Part shown: positions 6,301 to 17,751 of the stretch, piece by piece
Numbering within the stretch: position 1 is the first letter of the stretch
Layout of the letters: each line of letters opens with the position of its first letter
Origin: Asterias rubens
Lineage: Eukaryota
NCBI RefSeq assembly: GCF_902459465.1
Contig: NC_047080.1
Location: 11,160,001 to 11,224,000 of the forward strand
Direction of reading: 5' to 3'
DNA length: 64,000 nucleotides
The notes under the pieces: generated by a model
What the model saw: the letters and a program-made list of their open reading frames with translations, nothing else
Databases searched by the model: none
Told to the model about the DNA's origin: nothing
Position numbers and translations under genes: made by a program

Positions 6301-7495
6301 TAGTCATTTTGAAAATACATGCTTTCGGTACTGGGCTTCATTGACAGGAGGAGAGAACCTATAAGCAGGAGCTCAAAGCCCAAAGCCCAAACCATCGTTT
6401 CCAAAATGGCCAATTACATGTGCTTTGTATTTCTACTTCTTTCAAAGACGATAAAACAGTATGTTAAAGATACATCCATCGACAAACATAGCAGAGTGTA
6501 TTCCCCTCTGCCTATAACAACTAACGAGAGTAAGGCAATGATAAATCGCCTATTATCAAGATGATGGATTGTCTGTCATCAAGATGACTCTATTACTCGC
6601 GATTCGCTTCATTAATTGATGGATGAAAATATGCTCTTAATACAAGGAGCAAATTATGAATTGTGTTAAAGGGAGTTCTTTAAGTGTATTGGCCGCCATC
6701 TTTGATTACAAAAACGTGCACGCGTCACGCACTGCTTGACTGACATCTCTTCACGTACGTTTCATCGGCGATATGGCAAGTGCACGCAAGATGTTTATTT
6801 CAATCTTACCAATTCTGCAATCTTCATAATTTTATGAATGGTACTAAACCTACAGTTCTTGCCATGGCTTTAATAAGTCGGTATTAAGAGAAACGAACTA
6901 ATCTTATTTTAAAGAGGATTTGTAGTTAACTTTGTTTTGGAAATTGCGGTGAGCAACTTCGCAGTTGTTGATTAAAGCAGTCGCGAGAGGGCGCGTTTTG
7001 TATCAATGGTGAAGACTCTCCTCGTTTTGACACAATCATGAAATAATTTGAAACTCTGACGGCACAAGCTTTGACTTCTGTTTCATAAATTTCGGTTCAC
7101 ACCTTGATTACGGGTGTTTGGTAACGATTAATATGTTTCTCTTGGACTGTACAAACATTGAAACCAGACGGGGTGACCTGCGTAGGTTGGTGTCGGGTTG
7201 TTCTTTTCAAATTATCAACATTTATCAGAGCCACGTCACTCATTGGTGATAAATTGCTTAGTTTTGAGACAGCTGCGAATTGACAGTATTTGTTTTAGAG
7301 TGCCATGTCACACATGAGTAACACAAGTGTGTTCTGTTCTGAAACTGTTGCAGGAACTATGTAAACAATTCGATAAGTGAGGAGGTTCGGTGACTAGTAC
7401 AAACCAGAGCCGTTCTGAAATTAAAATATTATTCCATGTGAGGATAGTATGACACAAGTTATTGATTTATTGACTTCAAATGATCGTGATTTTTG

Positions 7496-7502
7496 TATAA
7501 AA
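7496..7502 (+). promoter_or_regulatory. Candidate TATA box of the 109-aa secreted-protein gene
   Basis: TATAAAA about 25-30 nt before an Inr-like ctcatcatt and about 160 nt before the ATG at 7660. Confidence 0.5.
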
Positions 7503-7659
7503 ACCAAACCTTGAACTTACAAAGCTCATCATTTGGCGTCAAATTCAAGAAGTTGGTGTCGGGCTGTTTCTCTGTACATCTCAGAGCACACTGTGCCACA
7601 TCACCGTTGTCGGTCAGTATCGAGTTTCTTGTTACTTATCCATCCACACAAGTACAACA

Positions 7660-8361
7660 ATGAAACTTTTGCTGTCAATACTCGTCATCACCGTCGCGGT
7701 ATCGGTGGTGAGCTCCCGAGCCGTCCTGCCAGTACTGAACGATCAAGGCACCTTCGTCAGATCGAACGGGATGCTAAAACGCGTTGCCCGCGATGCAGAA
7801 TCCAAGCTAAAGTCACTGATGAAGACCACAGCTCAAGATACCGAATGCAGACATTGCGAGAAACTTGAAGAACTGAAAAAGGTACGTAGATCTATGCATG
7901 AAGGAAGGTAGCTTTACGGTGGGGGTAATTATGGAGTTCCATTTCTACCTCCATGGGGTAATGTTTTTAGTCCTTGACTAGGTTAGAGTTGTGTAAGGAA
8001 GGGCTACAGAAATGAGTGTGGACATTAGAACAAAAGAGGTCCACACAGAGCTTGATACACTATGTGGACTTACATACACCCACACGAGTGTTGCAGAACA
8101 TGTTTTGAAGAGTGTTGAAGGAATGTCCACAGTAAAAGCTAAAAGGGACAATACTGTGCCCATAATACCCTTTAAACAATTTGTATAGTGTTTAAAGAGT
8201 TACGTATTCGAAGTTTTATTTATATTTTCTTCATTTTGATTTGTATACCACAGGCACTTCTCGCCATTGTTGAAAGCATAACGTGTCCAGATGAGCCAGA
8301 AGTTCCGTCAGATTCTTACTTGAGTTCGAACGATATTGATCTTGGAATCATCGACATGTAG
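7660..8361 (+). CDS. Orphan secreted protein or peptide precursor, 109 aa, 2 exons
   Basis: Exon 1 7660-7881 (donor AAG|gtacgt), exon 2 8254-8361 (acceptor ccacag|, stop TAG), phase 0. Protein MKLLLSILVITVAVSVVSS-RAVLPVLNDQGTFVRSNGMLKRVAR-DAESKLKSLMKTTAQDTECRHCEKLEELKK|ALLAIVESITCPDEPEVPSDSYLSSNDIDLGIIDM. Clear signal peptide, KR/RxxR site, 3 Cys. No family recognised. Confidence 0.8.
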
Positions 8362-9851
8362 AGTCAACTCAAGATTTGCACTGAAAGTGATGACGTCACT
8401 TGGATTATGTCATGTCTGGAACAACAGTATGCCTTACTTTGAACTATCGCAGTTACGTCTGTGATTTTTATGTCAAGAGTTTTGTGGGACTTTAAAATAT
8501 TAATAGCATCATGATTATTTTGTCCTTAAATCATATCTTCGTTGGGAACACTGGGTAAATCCAATCTTCATAACTAGTTCCCCCAACCCTGAAGTAACCC
8601 TCAGATATTACAAAAATGCAGGGAGGGTTCAACAATAATATGCTGGATCCCAAGCAGTCTGCTGATTTTACTTGTAATGGCTAAAAAGAACGCATATCGT
8701 TCAATTGAGTAACTGCTGTATAAATTCATGCCTCAAAGTTAGTTGGGTGAGAGTAGAGGCAACATCGCTTTACATGAATGCATGGGAGTGAAACAGTCTG
8801 AAGTTTTTTGCCGAAAACGACAGGGAAACCTGTTTTATAAAAGGCTTACTAAACTACTTCAAACCGCCGTGTGCTTATATCTGGACCTTTAGGCCTCCAT
8901 TAGTTATTTGAAATTGTGGTAATCTCATACAAATTACAGGATTGATCATACTTCCGTTTTACAATTTTATAAAATATTCCAGTGCTATTAACTATGTCGA
9001 TGCTTTACACAGAAATAAAGTTTCTTCAAATGTACGTTTTAGTAATTTTTGATTTGTTTTATGTTACACGTTCCTAAAATTGAACTGACCGCAAATATTT
9101 ATTGCACAAAAAGGGAACTAGAATATTTTTCTTTCCAACCTCGGTTTGGTTCGCAGTTATTTGAATGGCAGAAAAATTAAAACCTCGGTTTGGGCTGGCA
9201 CATCAGATAAAGGTCGACTTACCCAACTTTTCCATTGTTTTTTTTTATTAACAAGTAGTGGCTTCTTCAAATATAAGATCGTGTATGCGTTCCACAGCTG
9301 GTCTACGTCTACTGAAGTTGAAAAAATCGAACACAACTTGAAGACAAATATCGAGCGAACAGCACTACCCGTACGACGGGTTCGTCCAAAACACACTATT
9401 CCATATGTATTAATTATTTTTTATTATTAATTGGTTTATTGTAAAAAAAAAACACATTGCAGCCAAAGGCTGAATCACATGCAATTTACAAAAAAAAAAT
9501 ACATTATTATTAAAACTCAGGCAGTCTGAGACATAGTTTGCTCACTTCAGGTAAATATTAATAAACTGTTGATTCTCTCGAAATTTTGCCTTCTTGTTCT
9601 GAGCCAAATATGGATTTTCTGATAGAACAAATCAAAATAAACACTCTTTTTTTTATGTGGGGAAGATTTGTCAGACATATTCTAATAAAATGATTAATTA
9701 TCTGCTGTAAATGTAGACTGTGAACTGTAATCGCAACACTTATACCATGGATGGGTTTATGCAGGGGTCTTATTTAACAGTGAACGAGCAACATAGAAGA
9801 ACGTCTCCTTCATCATCCGTCCCATAAAGTAGAACATTTTGTTTGATAACC

Positions 9852-11564
9852 ATGAACGCCATTGCAATATTTGTGATTGGAGTGTGCCTGTTTGCGGGGT
9901 TACCGTCCGGGGATACCAAGCCCCTACCGGACCAAGATGGGGCTCGGCGCGCCGAAACACGGCAGCAGTTGAGGCAAGCACCTGGATTTCTCAAACTTGT
10001 TGAGAGTTCCATCGAGGCGAAAGAGGTACTTGATGAAGACAGTGTTGAGATGGTCGCTGATTGTCTGCATGGTGATTGCTCCGAGATCTACGAGCTCAGA
10101 CCTGTAAGTTTCCTCACAAAGTTATCAATGTAGTTTTTAACTTTCGGTCCCCTTAAAAAGTCAGAATTTACATATCACACCGAAACAGACAATTCTTATT
10201 TTCAAATTAAAGCTGGCCACTTTAGACCGTTATCTTTTTTGGTATCAAAGTTATACTTATTGCATTATACTTATGAATAATAGGGTGTCTGGATGAAGTC
10301 GGGTATAAATGAATAAACTTCACCTTATTTTACTAAAAGTAGGAAATGGAATTTTCTATAAAACAAAATGTTGAATGATTATTTGCTCTCAGCCGACTTT
10401 TTTTTAGGGTGGTCACGTTAATTGATGAGTTGAATTCATACCAATATAAGCCTGAATAGTAATAATGGACTTACTTCACATTCTCGTTACTTTGAGGCCT
10501 TTACAAAACGAATGTTTCTCTAATTGCAGGAGCTGTTAACTTTGATCAAACTGATCAATGAGAATGACAGAAACGCTGGAGAAAGATTATCGCCGGCACA
10601 GACAAGAGGGCCTCACTTTGGTAGTCACGAATCTAGTAGCCACCCTGAGCCCATCTCTGAGGACAACATATCTGAGTCAATAATCTCTGAGGACGGTCAC
10701 TCTGATTCCAGCCACACTGAGGACGGTCATTCTGAGTTCAGCATCTTCGAGGAAAGCCACTCTGAGTCCAGCAGTTCTGAAGACGGTCACTCTGACTCCA
10801 GCCACAGTGAGGACGGTCATTCTGAGCCCAGCATTTCCGAGGAAAGCCTTTCTGAGTCCAACAGCTCTGAGGACGGTCACTCTGATTCGATCCACACTGA
10901 GGACGGTCACTCCGAGTCCAGCAGCTCTGAGGATGGTCACTCTGAATCCAGCCACACTGAGGACGGTCACTCTGAGTCCAGTAGTTCTGAGGATGGTCAC
11001 TCTGACTCAAGCAGCACCGAGGATGGTCACTCTGTATCCAGCAGCTCTGAGGATGGTCACTCTGAGTCCAGTAGCTCCAAGGACAGCCACTCTGAGTCCA
11101 GCAGTTCTGAGGATGGTCACTCTGACTCAAGCAGCACCGAGGACGGTCACTCTGAGTCCAGCAGCTCTGAGGATGGTCACTCTGAATCCAGCCACACTGA
11201 GGACGGTCACTCTGAGTCCAGCAGCTCTGAGGATGGTCACTCTGAGTCCAGTAGCTCCAAGGACAGCCACTCTGAGTCCAGCAGTTCTGAGGACAGCCAC
11301 GCTGAGGGCGGTCACTCTGACTCCAGCCACGCTGAGGGAGGTCAATCTGACTCCAGCCACGCTGAGGAAGGTCAATCTGACTCCAGCCACACTGAGGTCG
11401 GTCACTCTGAGTCCAGCAGTTCTGAGGATGGTCGCTCTGACTCAAGCCACACTGAGGACGGTCACTCTGAATCCAGAAGCTCCGAGGATGGTCACTCAGA
11501 GTCCAGCAGCTCTGAAGACGGTCCATCTAAAACCAGTATCTCTGAGGACGACCACTCTGAGTAA
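9852..11564 (+). CDS. Orphan secreted Ser/His/Asp/Glu-rich repeat protein, 428 aa, 2 exons
   Basis: Exon 1 9852-10103 (MNAIAIFVIGVCLFAGLPSGDT signal peptide; donor CCT|gtaagt), exon 2 10530-11564 (acceptor ttgcag|GAG), phase 0, in frame with the 346-codon ORF. About 30 decamer repeats EDGHS[ED]SS[SH][ST]. Confidence 0.82.
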
Positions 11565-11612
11565 AGCATCTCAGCGAGCAGACACTCATAGTTCATCTTA
11601 TCTGAGGCCAGC
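10659..11612 (+). repeat. 30-bp coding minisatellite (consensus ~gaggacggtcactctgagtccagcagctct), ~30 units plus relic units past the stop
   Basis: Periodicity seen directly in DNA and protein; one half-unit (EDSHA). Confidence 0.95.
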
Positions 11613-12489
11613 CTTCATTTGCGAGTGCAGCAAATTTTAGTTAAAAGTTTTTAAAGTTGCAGCTACCTAATATCATTAAGTGTCACTTGTCTCTTAAAAT
11701 TGAAGTAATTTAGTTGACAGCCTAGTTGTCAGGGATTGGCCTTCAATGTTTGAAGAATAGTTTTGTAATTCCCTTGCTGCATTTAGCTTTAAACCTCTGT
11801 TGCTATTGAGTAAGCACCCATTCCACCTAATCCTTCATATTTCAACACCATGTTTTCTGTTGGATCGCATTTGTAAACTGAGTACATTCTACAATGGATC
11901 AGATTTACCACCATAAGCAGAGGTTAACTTTGGGTGTTGAATATTATTTGGTTTTACCCGTACACCGATGTTGTACTGTATACTCAATATTCCCCCACCC
12001 AGTCCTGCAATAAATAAAAGAAATGAGGGGCGAATACCTCTGTAATGGGACAACTTAAAATAAACCTCGCAAAGCTCATGAGTTTTTTTGAGTTGCAAGC
12101 TTTTATTCTTACTGACTGCTGTATGTACACTATTTACATAAAGTATTTACAGAAATGCAACACGTGTTGTGTGATTTGCTCCACATGTCATTACATAACA
12201 TGACATTCCTCATATTTCCAGTTCAACAAAACATAACACATCCTCTAACTAATCTTTGAGAAGGCAAAGATTTAAAAGAAATTTCAACCATGATTTAAAA
12301 GTCTGCCTGAATACGGTGGGTATCAACTGTCAGATGATATGGTGCTACCTCATTATCTTTTCTCTCAACAATGCAGCCATTTTTATTGTTAAGTTTGAAT
12401 AACGTCTGGTATACTGACTTGTTAAGTTGTGAGCTAGTACTTAGTTTTGAACTCCTCAGACTATAAGACAGCGTTCCTACATCACATAA

Positions 12490-12790
12490 GCAAGTAATTC
12501 TTGATCCCAGTGGTGTACAATCTCACCACGCAGTTTTTCTTCCTGAATGCCTTGCTCAATCATAACCCCTTGGAAGTGTGACTTTGAAATATCCAAATAT
12601 ATTGGATATTTCAATAAGCTAGGTGGTTGATCTACAATACCTGAATGCTCAAAATGGTCACAGCCCCCAAAACCCATTGAAATCATAGAGCAATTGCTGC
12701 CCCTCATTCTTCTATGAGTTTAGGGTGACTGTATAAAAACATGATTAACTTGAAGTGGATTGTGTCAAAATACTTGCATTTTGAATAGCA
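12490..12790 (+). repeat. Dispersed repeat homologous to 33867-34110 (opposite strand); lies in the presumed NELF-E 3' UTR
   Basis: Shared blocks cccagtggtgta, gaatg(c/t)cttgctc(a/g)atcata, tgga(a/g)gtgtgact..gaaatatccaaa.atattg.atattt, tcatagagcaa.tg, ttgaagtggat. Confidence 0.7.
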
Positions 12791-13074: not shown

Positions 13075-16000
13075 TTAGAAGATGTCCTCGTCATACACCT
13101 TCTTCTCCCTTTTGTCTTTGTGTCTGCTGCCTTTGATGGCTCCTTGTGCTATAAAAAGAAAAAAACAAGATTGAGAAAAAATAAATAAATCTTTAAAGGC
13201 AAAGTATACCGTTGGTTTTTGGAACCGTTTGATTGTTTTATTCCTGTAGATATTAAGATGTGTACAATAAAATAATATGTACAAATTTCATTTTGAAAAT
13301 AGGTTGCCAACAGGAAATTGATTCTTTCAATTCTAAAACGTGATCTCATTGTATCATAAAGTTAAGATCTTTGTGAATGAGGTTGGAGAATTATGTGTGC
13401 TACTAGGTGGCAGCAGACTTACCAGGTAAACGTTCATTATTTACGTAGTTCCAAGCATGTGCCATTACCGAGAATGATTTTACCTGGCAAGTCTGCTGCC
13501 ACCTAGCACCACAAAAGAACCCCCATTGGGTAAAGGGGTACACTTCCTAGCCTGAACATCTGAGATCACAGTTCGAGGCTTGTGAATAGACCAATCCATT
13601 AAGCCCCGCCCCATTACGTGTTGACCAATCACAACCCGTATCGCAACCAAAAGTCTGACAAATTAAGGTCCGACATGCGTGCACATTTGCTTAGCGCGCA
13701 CGGTAGAGTTGTGCAGAAAGGCAATGGAGAGGCGCACATGTTCTTGCTCACACGTGCGCCGTGGGTGGAGCCTAATGGATCGGTCTATTACACCAGAGAT
13801 CTGCTGTTGAGCCATGTACATTATCACCTTTGACCGTGCACCATTTCACATGGTTTTCATGGCTCTGGAGATTCACAGTTTAAATCCGAAAGACATGTGT
13901 TTACATACAAAGCCAACACCTGTAGGACAGGGACCAGTGTACACAATTCCTCACCTAGATCACTCCACGTTGACTTTCCAACTGTCTGGGTGTCATTGTT
14001 CGCGTACTTGTGAATGTTTGGTTGTCGTCGTGCCAGTGACACGTGGAGAACCGTTGACGAAACCATCTTGTTGTTCATTTCATTGATGGCTTTGTCGGCC
14101 GCCTCAAAATTATCAAACGTGATGAAGGCACAACTGAAATTCAGAGGAGGAACACAAAGGTTAAAAATTGAGGAAGCTTTCCCTTTTTAAACCCATCAAA
14201 CCTTGAAACTTGAGTTGACAAACCATTTGAAGACGATGAATATTTTTTATAAAAAGTAGACACCATATTCTGGGTTTTAAAATAAGCTTCTTGCGACTTG
14301 CGAGATAATTTTAGAACAAATCTGGTAAAAAGAAAATGTCTTAACAAAACACAACCCAACAGTGAATTTCAGAAGTAACCACAATCCAGTTTTAAGAGAC
14401 AGAAATCAAAATAAGTATGGAGATATCTTCTAGAAGCCCAGGCTTGTGGTGCGATGCCCGATGGACAGACAAACAGACACTTGACAAGAACGTACGGACA
14501 GACAGGTTGAACAAAGACAGAAATGATGAAAGACTTATACAAGACGTTGTGCAAATTTAACTCGCACAAACATCTTTTAATTGAAACCTGTCGCGAAGAC
14601 AAGAATTATTGAAACCCACCTCTTCTCCTGCTCCATGTTGATATTTGCAATCGTCCCAAATTTCTTGAACGCTTTATCGCACAGCTCGTGGGAGATTCCT
14701 CGACCGTGGACGTACACTGTATTTCCGCGCTTTCTTTCCTGTGAGCCTGTGTGTATTAAAACAGCAACAGGTGTTTCAATCAATTATAGGACAGGTGTTA
14801 ATCATTACCATGAACAGATGCCGAGTACAAACAAAGGGTGTAATTAATATTTGGCGAGTGTTTCAGATCAATACAACACAGGGAAGTGATAAGAAGGTTG
14901 ACGTACTTCGTAAACCATTAATAGTCACCAATAATTCAGCTGTTCAACCTCACACACACGTGTGATTGAGAACACATTTAAAGGCAGGGTAAATTTTTAG
15001 TTATTGTCAAAAACCACATATTCATAACGAATATAAAAAAAAGTCAAAAGTTGGCCTTAGATGGTCATTGAAGTTGACAATGAAAGAAGCAACACCCTGG
15101 TTACACAGAACTTTGTGCTTTCAATGCCTGAGATAAGAAAACCAGACCTGAAGTCATTCTCAGAATCAAATTGTGGGTGAAAAATTACCTCTTTCCCTAA
15201 AATTACATAACTTCAAAGGGGGTCATCTCTGACAATGCTTTATAACATCAATAGATCTCCAGTGTTCTTTATTAAGAAACTAACATACAAATGACTGTCT
15301 CATTTAGGAATGGTGTAATAGAGACCAAGTACCTACCGTCAGGTATGTCTGTTTGGGATGGTTTCCGACTGCTTACAAAACTAAACAAAGAGAGCAAAAC
15401 AAACATTTTTAAACAAGCACTTTGAGAATGGGTTTTTCAATACCTGTAATTGAAACCGTCTGAAAAGCCAATTCAACTGCAGGAGTTGTGTATGGTGGTA
15501 CGTAACTCTCTGTCTCTGCCTGTTTACACTGAATATTTAAAATGCATTTATTACATGATATCGTACTGCAGTCTTCCACAGTTTACCCATGTTCAAAACC
15601 ACAGTCGATATTGAACGATCAGATAGTAGGATGGTTGACTGTGAACCATATCACAGGCTTCCAAAGTTTACATATTGTTCAAACCAAAGTGGATATTGAA
15701 TGGTCAAACAGTAGGAGGGTTGACTATGTAGATGCATTCACAACAAATATTATACTCAAGGCTGCCAAAGTTTTACTTTTTTTCAAAACAGTATTTTGAT
15801 ACATGTATTATGGATGATACTAAACGGTAAAACAGTAGGAGGGTTAAGTGTATAAAGTGTACGATTTTCCATTCAACGGAAGTCAATAAAGTAAAATTAT
15901 ACCCCTTCCATTCATACTCACTTGTCATATAAATTCTTCTTGTGTAGTTTCCTTCCGTCCATGTTGGGTCCTGGACTCGTCTCCTCCCCACTGGATGGGC

Positions 16001-17751
16001 CACTGTTTGGACCCACAAAAGGCTGGAAAATGGGCAGGTCCGGTGCCTTCTCTGGCTCCTTAAGGCTGCGCTGCATCTTACGTGAACGCTTGAACCCTGA
16101 GCTCTTGTTCTCTTCTAGCTTGGCTTGTTTGGCCTATCAGGAGCCAAAGATTTAAAACGAAATCAGCAAAATAACCCACAACACAATCACCAGTTGCCGA
16201 GGTGCCCTGTGCTTTTGCTGTCGAGCCCTTTGCAAAGTTCCAATACAAACTGTCCTCATAGAAGTGCCCTTACGGGGGGAAAATTGCTGTGCCCCTTCAA
16301 GAACGAACTTCAATGCAATGGATTGGTTTAGAATTGGTACTTGACTAGGCCAAACCTGAAGTTTTGCTGAAATAGGCTGGGAAACCTATAATAGAACGTG
16401 GTAGGTTGGAATTTTGATGGTCTTTCTCATAATTGGTTAGACCAGTATTTTCAAGAGGATTTTTAGAGATGTAAAAGAAGTAGAATTTGAAACTTTGTTT
16501 GGTGGAAGTATAATTAGGTGAGGTTTGTGGTAGCACGGTAGCACCATGTGTAAATCTATTTTGACTAGTGTTGGTTCTGATAAGAACTGGTTGATAACAC
16601 AACGTTTCTATCAGTATGCTCTATCTTATCAACTTCAATAGGATGTTGGACTCTGTTGCTGGGAAGCTGCTTAAGTACTAATACTATCTGGGGGAAATAT
16701 AATGTTGCTGCAGTTCTTAGCTTCGTCACACTGACCTGTTCAGCAGCTAATACTTTCTTAGCCATCTCTTTGGCATCTTCTTGGCTGGTTTCTGGCAAGG
16801 CTGCATTATCAAAATGGAAATAAGTAAATATGAAAAAATAATAATTATGTAACCAAAATATTGATAAAATAGGAAGACTGCCGACCTTGAGGCTCACTAG
16901 ATAACTCAGTTTGTAGAGTGGTGGCACGTTAGTCGAGAGGTCGCAGGTTCAAATCCCGCTGTAGTAAATATTTCTTTATCAACTTAGAATTTATTTTGTC
17001 TACTGAATTCAACTTACCTCTTTTTGTACCTGGTTGTGGAGTGAGAGGCGCAGGTTTGTTTTTATTATTTTTCAACTGTTGTAAAACTTTCTTCTGTAAA
17101 AAAAGCAATTCAAAACAAAGTTATTAGGCCTGCTACAATATTTTGATTAAGTAAATACCTCTATCAACCCAAGACCTGGTTGTTGCAGCACGTACGTTTT
17201 TATTTAAATTTATTACTACCAACACGACAAGCCCAGGTTAATGTGCTTTCCACAATTGCGCTAGAGACTTTGGGAAAATCTTGGCATAAAAACATGGATT
17301 GAGTCCAGCATATGATATTGACACTGTATTTTCTGATGCTCCATTTTATAAATACAATTGAATAGGGCCTGTCTAGGCTAATTCTAATTCTAGTCCCATC
17401 ACATCATTCATAAAAACAAAATACAGAAATGTTATTGGCCCCATTCATTTCGCTGTATCTTGGCACTTAAAATTGGCCAAAGAAATCCTCATTACTCATG
17501 TAACTTTATAAAAGTGTATTACAATTTATACCAAATACAAGTATTTCATCATGCAAAACTAACAATAACATCATCAAAAAAGCAAAATTCAAATCACAAA
17601 ACAATTTTCACGATGTTGGTGCAGTGATATTTTACATGTTTACAAAATGAAATTATCACTGATTCCTATAATTTCATACCTTTTTCCGTATCTTGGCATA
17701 TTTATTTTGCAGCATCTCCTCTTCCTCAGTCATACGGGACGGAAAAACCAT
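13075..17751 (-). CDS. NELFE: Negative elongation factor E (RRM protein), 282 aa, 8 coding exons
   Basis: Exons 17751-17680, 17093-17018, 16800-16736, 16133-15922, 15380-15337, 14746-14620, 14133-13955, 13148-13075; all GT-AG with consistent phases (849 nt). N-terminus MVFPSRMTEEEEMLQNKYAKIRKKKK, motif SGFKRSR, RRM RGNTVYVHG..SCAFITFDNFEAADKAINEMN and C-terminus KVYDEDIF all match NELF-E. Confidence 0.95.
13403..13506. mobile_element. ~105-bp palindromic MITE in a NELF-E intron (second, degraded copy near 41278-41395)
   Basis: 28-bp TIR ctaggtggcagcagacttaccaggtaaa / tttacctggcaagtctgctgccacctag. Confidence 0.75.
14982..15265. mobile_element. Old, degraded TTAA MITE family A-related copy
   Basis: ttaa|aggcagggt..ttgtcaaaaacc start; recognisable internal blocks (aattacctctttc, cataacttcaaaggggg). 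Confidence 0.55.
16897..16985 (+). mobile_element. tRNA-derived SINE head, family 1
   Basis: A-box-like ataactcagtttgtagagtgg and B-box ggttcaaatccc; homologous to 39978-40075 and 35093-35172 (-). Confidence 0.7.

What the first reader, a model, noticed from the sequence alone, without database searches (positions are those of the whole stretch)
7660..11564. Tandem pair of orphan secreted-protein genes sharing a cryptic Cys/His motif and intron position: a candidate undescribed family
Seen: both genes have two coding exons, a signal peptide, an early dibasic site (MLKRVAR; GARR) and a phase-0 intron at the same point in a shared motif. Gene 1 reads ECRH--CEKLEELKK|ALLAIV and gene 2 reads DCLHGDCSEIYELRP|ELLTLI. 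Neither link shows in the single-exon ORF track. After the motif they diverge fully: gene 1 has a short acidic tail with a third, unpaired Cys, while gene 2 has about 300 aa of Ser/His/acidic repeats. Inference: they are ancient tandem paralogues of a lineage-specific secreted family, with a small disulfide-stabilised helical module acting as an assembly or targeting domain on different tails. Gene 1 could alternatively be a prohormone. I recognise no known family.
Basis: partly seen in the sequence, partly recalled or inferred. Interest (0 to 1): 0.75.

Follow-up and report, generated by a model that had tools for sequence, protein, structure and literature searches.

The report
Two orphan secreted starfish genes
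Two neighbouring, already annotated but unnamed Asterias genes encode fast-evolving secreted proteins that are probably old tandem duplicates, one carrying a long Ser/Glu/His repeat tail; this is a lineage-specific oddity, not a new kind of system.

Summary
Both two-exon gene models match the genome's existing annotation: gene 1 is XP_033643599.1 (LOC117303487, 109 aa, Asterias rubens) and gene 2 is the next called gene (428 aa). RNA-derived contigs show junction 7881/8254 twice and 10103/10530 once. A. amurensis has both genes in the same order.

The shared motif is real but weak. Smith-Waterman score is 48 (shuffle p about 0.003; 0.02-0.03 with the A. amurensis sequences). hhalign gives P 0.003 and probability 10%. 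The only intron of each gene falls in the same aligned column, which happens in 0.6% of shuffles. Tandem paralogy is therefore probable (about 70%) but not proven.

The "Cys/His" label fails. The His changes in both A. amurensis orthologues (H to Y, H to Q). Only the Cys pair is kept, with different spacing (CxxC against CxxxxC).

No relative of gene 1 turned up outside Asterias in 1.84 billion representatives, and Pfam, PDB sequences and the ESM Atlas gave nothing. Both genes evolve fast (pooled dN/dS about 0.46).

Gene 2's tail is 29 copies of EDGHSESSSS, with net charge about -87. I infer a hyper-phosphorylated, cation-binding disordered polyanion, analogous to phosphodontin or DSPP. Tissue and function remain unknown. 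Interest is modest.

The parts
7385..7659 (+). Gene 1 5' UTR, at least as far upstream as the RNA contigs reach. It contains short upstream ORFs, for example 7449-7512.
7660..7881 (+). Gene 1 coding exon 1 (residues 1-74): signal peptide, KR at residues 40-41, CRHC at 63-66.
7882..8253 (+). Gene 1 intron (372 nt, GT..AG, phase 0). It holds a short high-copy element at 8015-8085.
8254..8361 (+). Gene 1 coding exon 2 (residues 75-109 plus stop): end of the amphipathic helix, third Cys, acidic tail. The stretch from the third Cys (C85) to the end is identical in A. amurensis.
8362..9034 (+). Gene 1 3' UTR, with AATAAA at 9014. The RNA contigs end at 9004 and 9034.
7768..8280 (+). Gene 1 copy of the shared module (residues 37-83, interrupted by the intron): GMLKRV ... 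CxxC ... EELKK|ALLAIVESI.
9852..10103 (+). Gene 2 coding exon 1 (residues 1-84): signal peptide, RR at residues 33-34, CLHGDC at 71-76.
10104..10529 (+). Gene 2 intron (426 nt, GT..AG, phase 0).
10530..11564 (+). Gene 2 coding exon 2 (residues 85-428 plus stop).
9984..10556 (+). Gene 2 copy of the shared module (residues 45-93, interrupted by the intron): GFLKLV ... CxxxxC ... YELRP|ELLTLIKLI.
10671..11562 (+). 30-nt-period array encoding about 29 decapeptides, consensus EDGHSESSSS. The tail (residues 111-428) is 39% Ser, 28% Asp+Glu, 12% His.

Best explanation
The two features are real, spliced, two-exon genes of Asterias rubens for secreted proteins. Both are already annotated as uncharacterized, are conserved in order and structure in A. 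amurensis, evolve fast, and have no detectable relative elsewhere.

They are probably old tandem duplicates. What remains shared is a stretch of about 50 residues: G-x-L-K-x-V, a helix, a Cys pair at a helix break, then an amphipathic Leu/Ile helix. The single phase-0 intron cuts both genes at the same aligned point.

Gene 1 kept a short acidic tail with a third Cys, which could allow disulfide dimers. Gene 2 gained or expanded an array of about 29 EDGHSESSSS repeats.

Inferred, not shown: after signal-peptide removal the gene 2 tail is phosphorylated in the secretory pathway on its S-x-E and S-x-S sites. It would then act as a disordered, very acidic, His-periodic binder of divalent cations (Ca2+, Zn2+), in the manner of phosphodontin, DSPP or SCPP-type proteins. 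Possible roles are control of stereom mineral or condensation of a secretion. The N-terminal module would be the only folded or self-associating part.
For: Gene models:
- Both models and junctions are confirmed and agree with the annotation.
- The orthologous pair lies in the same order next to the same RRM gene in A. amurensis.

Purifying selection is weak:
- Pooled dN/dS is 0.46 (binomial p 0.03 against neutrality).
- Both exon 1 indels of gene 2 are in frame.

Similarity between the two genes:
- Score 48, p about 0.003; reversed sequence scores 23; window shuffles give p 0.002-0.006.
- hhalign P-value is 0.003.
- The intron sites align by chance in only 0.6% of shuffles.
- A. amurensis gene 2 reads GFLKRV, matching gene 1's GMLKRV more closely.
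- Low-confidence AlphaFold2 models of both show a helix, a break at the Cys pair, then a helix.

Gene 2 tail:
- 29 decapeptides, with 78 of 125 Ser in S-x-[E/S] and net charge about -87.
- The array is kept in A. amurensis, where the protein is 95 residues longer (523 against 428 aa).

Precedent for such analogues: phosphodontin has a signal peptide plus 35 short acidic Ser repeats and is heavily phosphorylated (PMC2830187). The S-x-E/pS preference of the Golgi kinase FAM20C is established knowledge (see PMC3416761, listed).
Against: - The similarity is weak. hhalign probability is 10%, and tblastn does not link the two genes even at E 50.
- With the A. amurensis sequences p rises to 0.02-0.03.
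- The His and several other shared residues change between sister species.
- The Cys spacing differs between the genes.
- Exon 1 of each gene is no more conserved than its intron (95% against 94-96%). Constraint is therefore slight and the proteins could be near-neutral.
- The last 55 or so codons of gene 2 are frame-shifted in A. amurensis.
- No tissue, phosphorylation, disulfide or metal-binding data exist.
- A sea star skeletal proteome (Patiria miniata) contained no acidic repeat proteins (PMC5460417). A tail almost free of Lys and Arg would, however, escape tryptic proteomics.
Confidence: 0.55

Rival explanations
1. The two genes are unrelated orphan genes that happen to be neighbours. 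The shared pattern is a chance resemblance between two amphipathic, Glu/Lys/Leu-rich helical segments that each hold two Cys.
For: - hhalign probability is only 10%.
- p is 0.02-0.03 for three of the four cross-species pairings.
- tblastn finds no link.
- The His is not conserved and the Cys spacing differs.
- The finding was picked by eye from a very large scan, so some coincidences of this size are expected.
Against: - The joint chance of the score (about 0.003) and of the aligned intron site (0.006) is about 2e-5 for the A. rubens pair.
- Strand, exon number and intron phase are the same, and the genes are adjacent.
- The reversed-sequence control scores only 23.
Confidence: 0.25
2. Gene 1 is a prohormone or neuropeptide precursor. 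It would be cut at KR (residues 40-41) to release an N-terminal 20-mer and a 68-residue Cys-containing peptide. Gene 2 would be a granin-like acidic helper of the same secretory granules.
For: - A signal peptide plus a conserved KR.
- ESM Atlas feature neighbours are small secreted or prohormone-like clusters, at scores of 0.75-0.83.
- The acidic C-terminal tail of gene 1 is fully conserved between the two species.
Against: - No Gly precedes the KR for amidation.
- No precursor of matching length and layout is listed in the A. rubens nerve-cord catalogue (PMC4772807).
- All Atlas scores are below the 0.9 level, at which shuffled proteins also score.
- The KR at the homologous place in gene 2 is present in A. 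amurensis but lost in A. rubens.
- There is no Pfam match of any kind, so no Granin match.
- Gene 2 has almost no dibasic sites.
Confidence: 0.1
3. The genes are young or barely constrained transcribed ORFs whose proteins have little specific function. The repeat tail would be a drifting minisatellite inside a coding exon.
For: - Exon 1 identity equals intron identity.
- dN/dS for each gene alone is not significantly below 1 (p 0.09 and 0.14).
- The C-terminus of gene 2 is frame-shifted in A. amurensis, and the repeat array differs in length (protein 95 residues longer).
- AlphaFold2 and ESM confidence is low.
Against: - Pooled dN/dS is 0.46 (p 0.03).
- The exon 1 indels are in frame.
- Splice sites, signal peptides, the Cys pair and the gene 1 tail are intact in both species.
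- Gene 1 is well represented in two transcript assemblies (word depth 38-55).
Confidence: 0.1

Closest known systems
Phosphodontin (Strongylocentrotus purpuratus tooth matrix phosphoprotein, Glean3:18919; PMC2830187)
   Same: It is an echinoderm-specific secreted protein built as a signal peptide plus about 30-35 short acidic Ser-containing repeats. It is disordered, has a very low pI, and has no relatives outside its lineage.
   Different: The repeat unit differs (EISSGEGEQPK against EDGHSESSSS). Phosphodontin has no periodic His, no Cys-pair N-terminal module, and an Asp-rich C-terminus that is absent here. Phosphorylation and tissue are shown for phosphodontin but not for gene 2. Homology was not tested directly.
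Vertebrate SCPP/SIBLING proteins (DSPP phosphophoryn, DMP1, caseins, histatins)
   Same: These are tandemly arranged, fast-evolving secreted genes with phase-0 introns. They have Ser/Asp/Glu-rich disordered tails with S-x-E/pS sites for the Golgi kinase FAM20C. Some members are His-rich.
   Different: Gene 2 has no sequence or Pfam match. The SCPP family is a vertebrate lineage descended from SPARCL1, so any likeness is convergent.
Granins (chromogranin A/B)
   Same: They are acidic, cation-binding secretory proteins with a short N-terminal disulfide loop that serves in sorting.
   Different: Gene 2 has no Pfam match of any kind, so no Granin match. It has very few dibasic sites, its loop is 4 residues against about 20, and it belongs to a different lineage.
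Other orphan secreted repeat proteins noted in this same genome (earlier scan note s1-175483: a two-exon gene with 24 RPEGSRPP repeats)
   Same: The layout is the same: a signal peptide, two exons, a lineage-specific tandem peptide repeat, and no named family.
   Different: The repeat chemistry is unrelated (basic and Pro-rich against acidic, Ser- and His-rich). No paralogous neighbour was reported for it.

Membership tests
SCPP / SIBLING (DSPP, DMP1) | Sequence homology to family members or Pfam models (for example DMP1) | tested here: not met
   Pfam scan of all four exons at E up to 1 gave no such match.
SCPP / SIBLING (DSPP, DMP1) | Secreted, disordered, Ser-rich acidic tail with S-x-E/pS motifs, and phase-0 introns | tested here: met
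   78 of 125 tail Ser lie in S-x-[E/S] and 16 in S-x-E. Net charge is about -87. The intron is phase 0. This shows a functional likeness only.
Phosphodontin-like echinoderm matrix phosphoproteins | Signal peptide followed by tens of short acidic Ser repeats | tested here: met
   29 decapeptide repeats follow a hydrophobic N-terminus.
Phosphodontin-like echinoderm matrix phosphoproteins | Shown phosphorylation and presence in a mineralised matrix | not testable with these tools
   No proteomic data for Asterias ossicles were available. The Patiria miniata skeletal proteome reported no acidic repeat proteins (PMC5460417).
Neuropeptide / prohormone precursor | Signal peptide plus mono- or dibasic sites flanking a conserved peptide, often with Gly for amidation | tested here: inconclusive
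   The signal peptide and KR are present and conserved. The residue before KR is Leu, not Gly. The KR at the homologous site in gene 2 is not conserved.
Neuropeptide / prohormone precursor | Listed among the A. rubens nerve-cord neuropeptide precursors | tested here: not met
   No listed precursor has 109 residues with a 19-residue signal peptide and a dibasic site at 40/41. The only 109-residue entry is the relaxin-like ArRGPP, which has a 26-residue signal peptide (PMC4772807).
Granin | Match to the granin family model, an N-terminal disulfide loop and many dibasic sites | tested here: not met
   There is no Pfam match, and the tail has only a handful of Lys/Arg.
Thioredoxin-like CxxC redox proteins | CxxC at a helix N-terminus within a thioredoxin fold | tested here: not met
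   CxxC occurs only in gene 1; gene 2 has CxxxxC. There is no Pfam or PDB sequence match. The models are all-helical and of low confidence.
Proposed new two-member family (gene 1 + gene 2) | Statistically significant sequence or profile similarity between the N-terminal modules | tested here: inconclusive
   Shuffle p is 0.003 for A. rubens and 0.02-0.03 with the A. amurensis sequences. hhalign gives P 0.003 but probability 10%.
Proposed new two-member family (gene 1 + gene 2) | Shared gene structure: same intron position and phase in the alignment | tested here: met
   An alignment made without reference to the introns places both intron sites in one column. This occurs in 0.6% of shuffles.

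The most novel reading that the evidence does not exclude
The helix / Cys-pair / helix stretch of about 50 residues is a genuine, starfish-specific secretory module for sorting or disulfide-linked assembly. It would be shared by a small acidic protein and a hyper-phosphorylated, His-periodic polyanion. The two products would work together, with the short one capping or regulating assemblies of the long one, in stereom mineral control or in a pH- or metal-switchable secretion.
Probability: 0.12. Interest if true: 0.55.

Novelty: new member of a known kind. Interest (0 to 1): 0.3.

Why it matters
If the tail is phosphorylated and sits in ossicle matrix, it would be the first acidic repeat phosphoprotein tied to sea star skeleton. 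The published Patiria miniata skeletal proteome reported no acidic repeat proteins, and a Lys/Arg-poor phosphoprotein like this one would be invisible to tryptic proteomics.

The pair also shows how a short secreted protein and a long repeat protein can diverge from one tandem duplicate until only the gene structure and a few residues betray it.

Otherwise it adds two more entries to the long list of taxonomically restricted secreted genes.

Tried and rejected
- **Distant homologues of gene 1.** The word-index search found only the Asterias cluster. The exhaustive phmmer over 1.84 billion representatives found self, an exon-2 ORF fragment (P0003), and repeat-inflated chance hits.
- **P0002 as a relative.** Its E-value of 1e-12 comes from a 25-bit match repeated more than 20 times in a 3666-aa repeat protein of an unrelated assembly. 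I rejected it.
- **Gene 2 searches.** The exon 2 start and exon 1 found nothing or only the window's own ORF fragment. The annotated full-length gene 2 protein itself was not retrieved, so these blanks say little.
- **A third family copy in the window.** tblastn of both N-termini found none.
- **Family and structure libraries.** Pfam, PDB sequences and the ESM Atlas gave nothing above noise.
- **Fold searches.** I did not run them, because both AlphaFold2 models have pLDDT of about 52-56 and would give meaningless matches.
- **Synteny in other asteroid genomes.** Walking out from the neighbouring RRM gene was not possible. The only protein search left is length-limited and cannot take a multi-exon query by reference.
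- **Literature.** No paper holds the accession, the locus name or peptide strings from either protein. The A. rubens footprint-protein paper describes only large modular proteins.
- **Rfam.** A scan of 7000-12500 found nothing.
- **Reads over the repeat array.** I did not lay reads on it, to avoid the tool's bar on long repeats. The 3' end of the gene 2 transcript is therefore unverified.
Full report
**What is there.** Gene 1 is 7660-7881 + 8254-8361 and encodes 109 aa. Gene 2 is 9852-10103 + 10530-11564 and encodes 428 aa. Each has one GT..AG intron in phase 0.

Laying contigs of four public runs on 7000-10670 showed that two transcript-like assemblies (X1, X3) each hold one contig of about 1.25 kb. 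It runs from about 7385 to 7879 and directly on to 8252-9034, which equals the 7881/8254 junction once the ambiguous bases are shifted. It ends just after the AATAAA at 9014.

For gene 2, one low-depth X3 contig covers 9857-10104 and continues with 16 nt identical to 10531-10546. That is the 10103/10530 junction. Runs X2 and X4 cover the introns and behave as DNA.

I left the 30-nt repeat array out of the read-laying on purpose, so the 3' end of the gene 2 transcript is not verified.

**Identity of the genome and the annotation.** The gene 1 protein is letter-for-letter XP_033643599.1, 'uncharacterized protein LOC117303487 [Asterias rubens]'. It is followed, tail to tail, by an RRM-domain gene.

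Both models are therefore already annotated but unnamed. No paper in the searchable library mentions the locus, the accession or peptide strings from either protein.

**Comparison with Asterias amurensis.** The same three genes lie in the same order.

- Gene 1 is 93% identical (P0001).
- Gene 2 has the same two-exon structure and a longer repeat array (523 aa).
- DNA identity is 94-96% in flanks, introns and intergenic DNA.
- Exon 1 of each gene is also only 95% identical.
- dN/dS is 0.41 for gene 1 and 0.49 for the non-repeat part of gene 2. Neither alone differs significantly from 1. Pooled, the ratio is 0.46 with p = 0.03.

Constraint is thus real but slight.

- The two indels in gene 2 exon 1 are in frame.
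- The gene 1 sequence from its third Cys (C85) to the end is invariant.
- A 14-nt indel shifts the frame of the last 55 or so codons of gene 2 in A. amurensis.

**The shared motif.** A Smith-Waterman alignment made without reference to the introns aligns gene 1 residues 37-83 with gene 2 residues 45-93.

- Score 48; shuffle mean 27; p about 0.003.
- The reversed sequence scores 23.
- Shuffling within windows of 7-20 residues gives p 0.002-0.006.
- With one or both A. amurensis sequences the score falls to 38-40 (p 0.02-0.03).
- hhalign of the two 2-sequence alignments gives P 0.003 but a probability of only 10%.
- tblastn does not connect the genes at E 50.

Independent of the score, the alignment puts the only intron of each gene in the same column. 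That occurred in 0.6% of shuffles.

Add the same strand, adjacency, the same exon number and the same phase, and I rate old tandem duplication at about 70%.

The His becomes Tyr in A. amurensis gene 1 and Gln in gene 2. The Cys pair is conserved, but it is spaced CxxC in one gene and CxxxxC in the other. In the other direction, A. amurensis gene 2 reads GFLKRV, which is closer to gene 1's GMLKRV.

**No known family.**

- Pfam gives nothing for any exon.
- PDB sequences give nothing below E 0.8.
- ESM Atlas neighbours score 0.83 or less, a range that shuffled proteins also reach. They are merely other small secreted proteins.
- The exhaustive phmmer of gene 1 against 1.84 billion representatives found only itself, an ORF fragment of its own exon 2, and repeat-inflated chance hits. 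P0002's 1e-12 is a 25-bit match repeated more than 20 times.
- Searches starting from gene 2 were uninformative, because even the annotated protein itself was not retrieved.

AlphaFold2 without an alignment gives low-confidence models (pLDDT 52 and 56). Both show a long helix, a break at the Cys pair and a second helix. I take this only as compatible with a helical hairpin.

**The tails.** Gene 2 carries 29 decapeptides with consensus EDGHSESSSS, often alternating with EDGHSESSHT.

- The tail (residues 111-428) is 39% Ser, 28% Asp+Glu and 12% His.
- The mature protein has net charge about -87 (the tail alone about -80).
- 78 of 125 Ser lie in S-x-[E/S].

From established knowledge of the Golgi casein kinase FAM20C (S-x-E/pS), I infer heavy phosphorylation and divalent-cation binding. 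This is not shown.

The closest echinoderm analogue is phosphodontin of the sea urchin tooth. It has a signal peptide plus 35 repeats of EISSGEGEQPK and is experimentally phosphorylated (PMC2830187). Among vertebrates the analogues are DSPP, DMP1 and other SCPPs. An earlier scan note on this same stretch (s1-150963) reached the same analogy.

These are likenesses of chemistry, not membership. There is no sequence match, and SCPPs are a vertebrate lineage.

A Patiria miniata skeletal proteome reported no acidic repeat proteins (PMC5460417). That speaks mildly against a matrix role. However, a tail with only five Lys/Arg in 300 residues would escape tryptic analysis.

**Gene 1 as a prohormone.** This alternative has little support.

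- The residue before KR is Leu, not Gly.
- None of the A. rubens neuropeptide precursors described in PMC4772807 matches its length and layout.

**Verdict.** The proposed function of the shared module is untested, and tissue and function are unknown. It is a new member of a known kind (orphan secreted acidic repeat proteins), not a new system.

Noticed in passing
window 8015-8085 (inside the gene 1 intron): A short element reaches word depths of about 86 to 1500 per depth bin in all four runs, and up to 4530 for single contigs, with different flanks in the other contigs. It is therefore a high-copy dispersed repeat. It contains the inverted repeat GTGTGGAC...GTCCACAC. It occurs once in the window, is kept in A. 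amurensis with small indels, and has no Rfam match.
   Followed up: partly
window 8560-8960 (gene 1 3' UTR): This stretch is 98.3% identical to A. amurensis, against 94-96% for introns, flanks and even coding exon 1. Part of the 3' UTR is thus the best-conserved piece of the locus.
   Followed up: partly
window 13075-17751, minus strand: A multi-exon RRM-domain gene (282-aa product, PF00076) lies tail to tail with gene 2. Its N-terminus (MVFPSRMTEEEEMLQNKYAKIRKK) and single RRM recall NELF-E, from memory only. It would be a good synteny anchor for finding the pair in other sea stars.
   Followed up: no
L001 about 13950-14090, against window 11400-11570: A. amurensis gene 2 has a 14-nt insertion, a 15-nt insertion and a 5-nt deletion that removes the A. 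rubens stop codon. The last 55 or so residues are therefore read in another frame. This is either real rapid turnover or an assembly error within the repeat.
   Followed up: partly
window 7436-7512 (gene 1 5' UTR): Three upstream ATGs lie within the transcribed leader, including a 21-codon upstream ORF at 7449-7512. A TATAAAA at about 7497 suggests that some transcripts may start downstream of them.
   Followed up: no
window 9090-9215 and 9440-9540 (intergenic): These are A/T-rich stretches with raised depth (100-180) in run X2 and loose ends on both sides. They are probably further dispersed repeats.
   Followed up: no
L002 (GCA_963556715.1, OY750816.1): A 3666-aa protein is built of about 27 copies of a 131-residue repeat. 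It came up as a repeat-inflated false hit to gene 1 and has no Pfam domain.
   Followed up: partly
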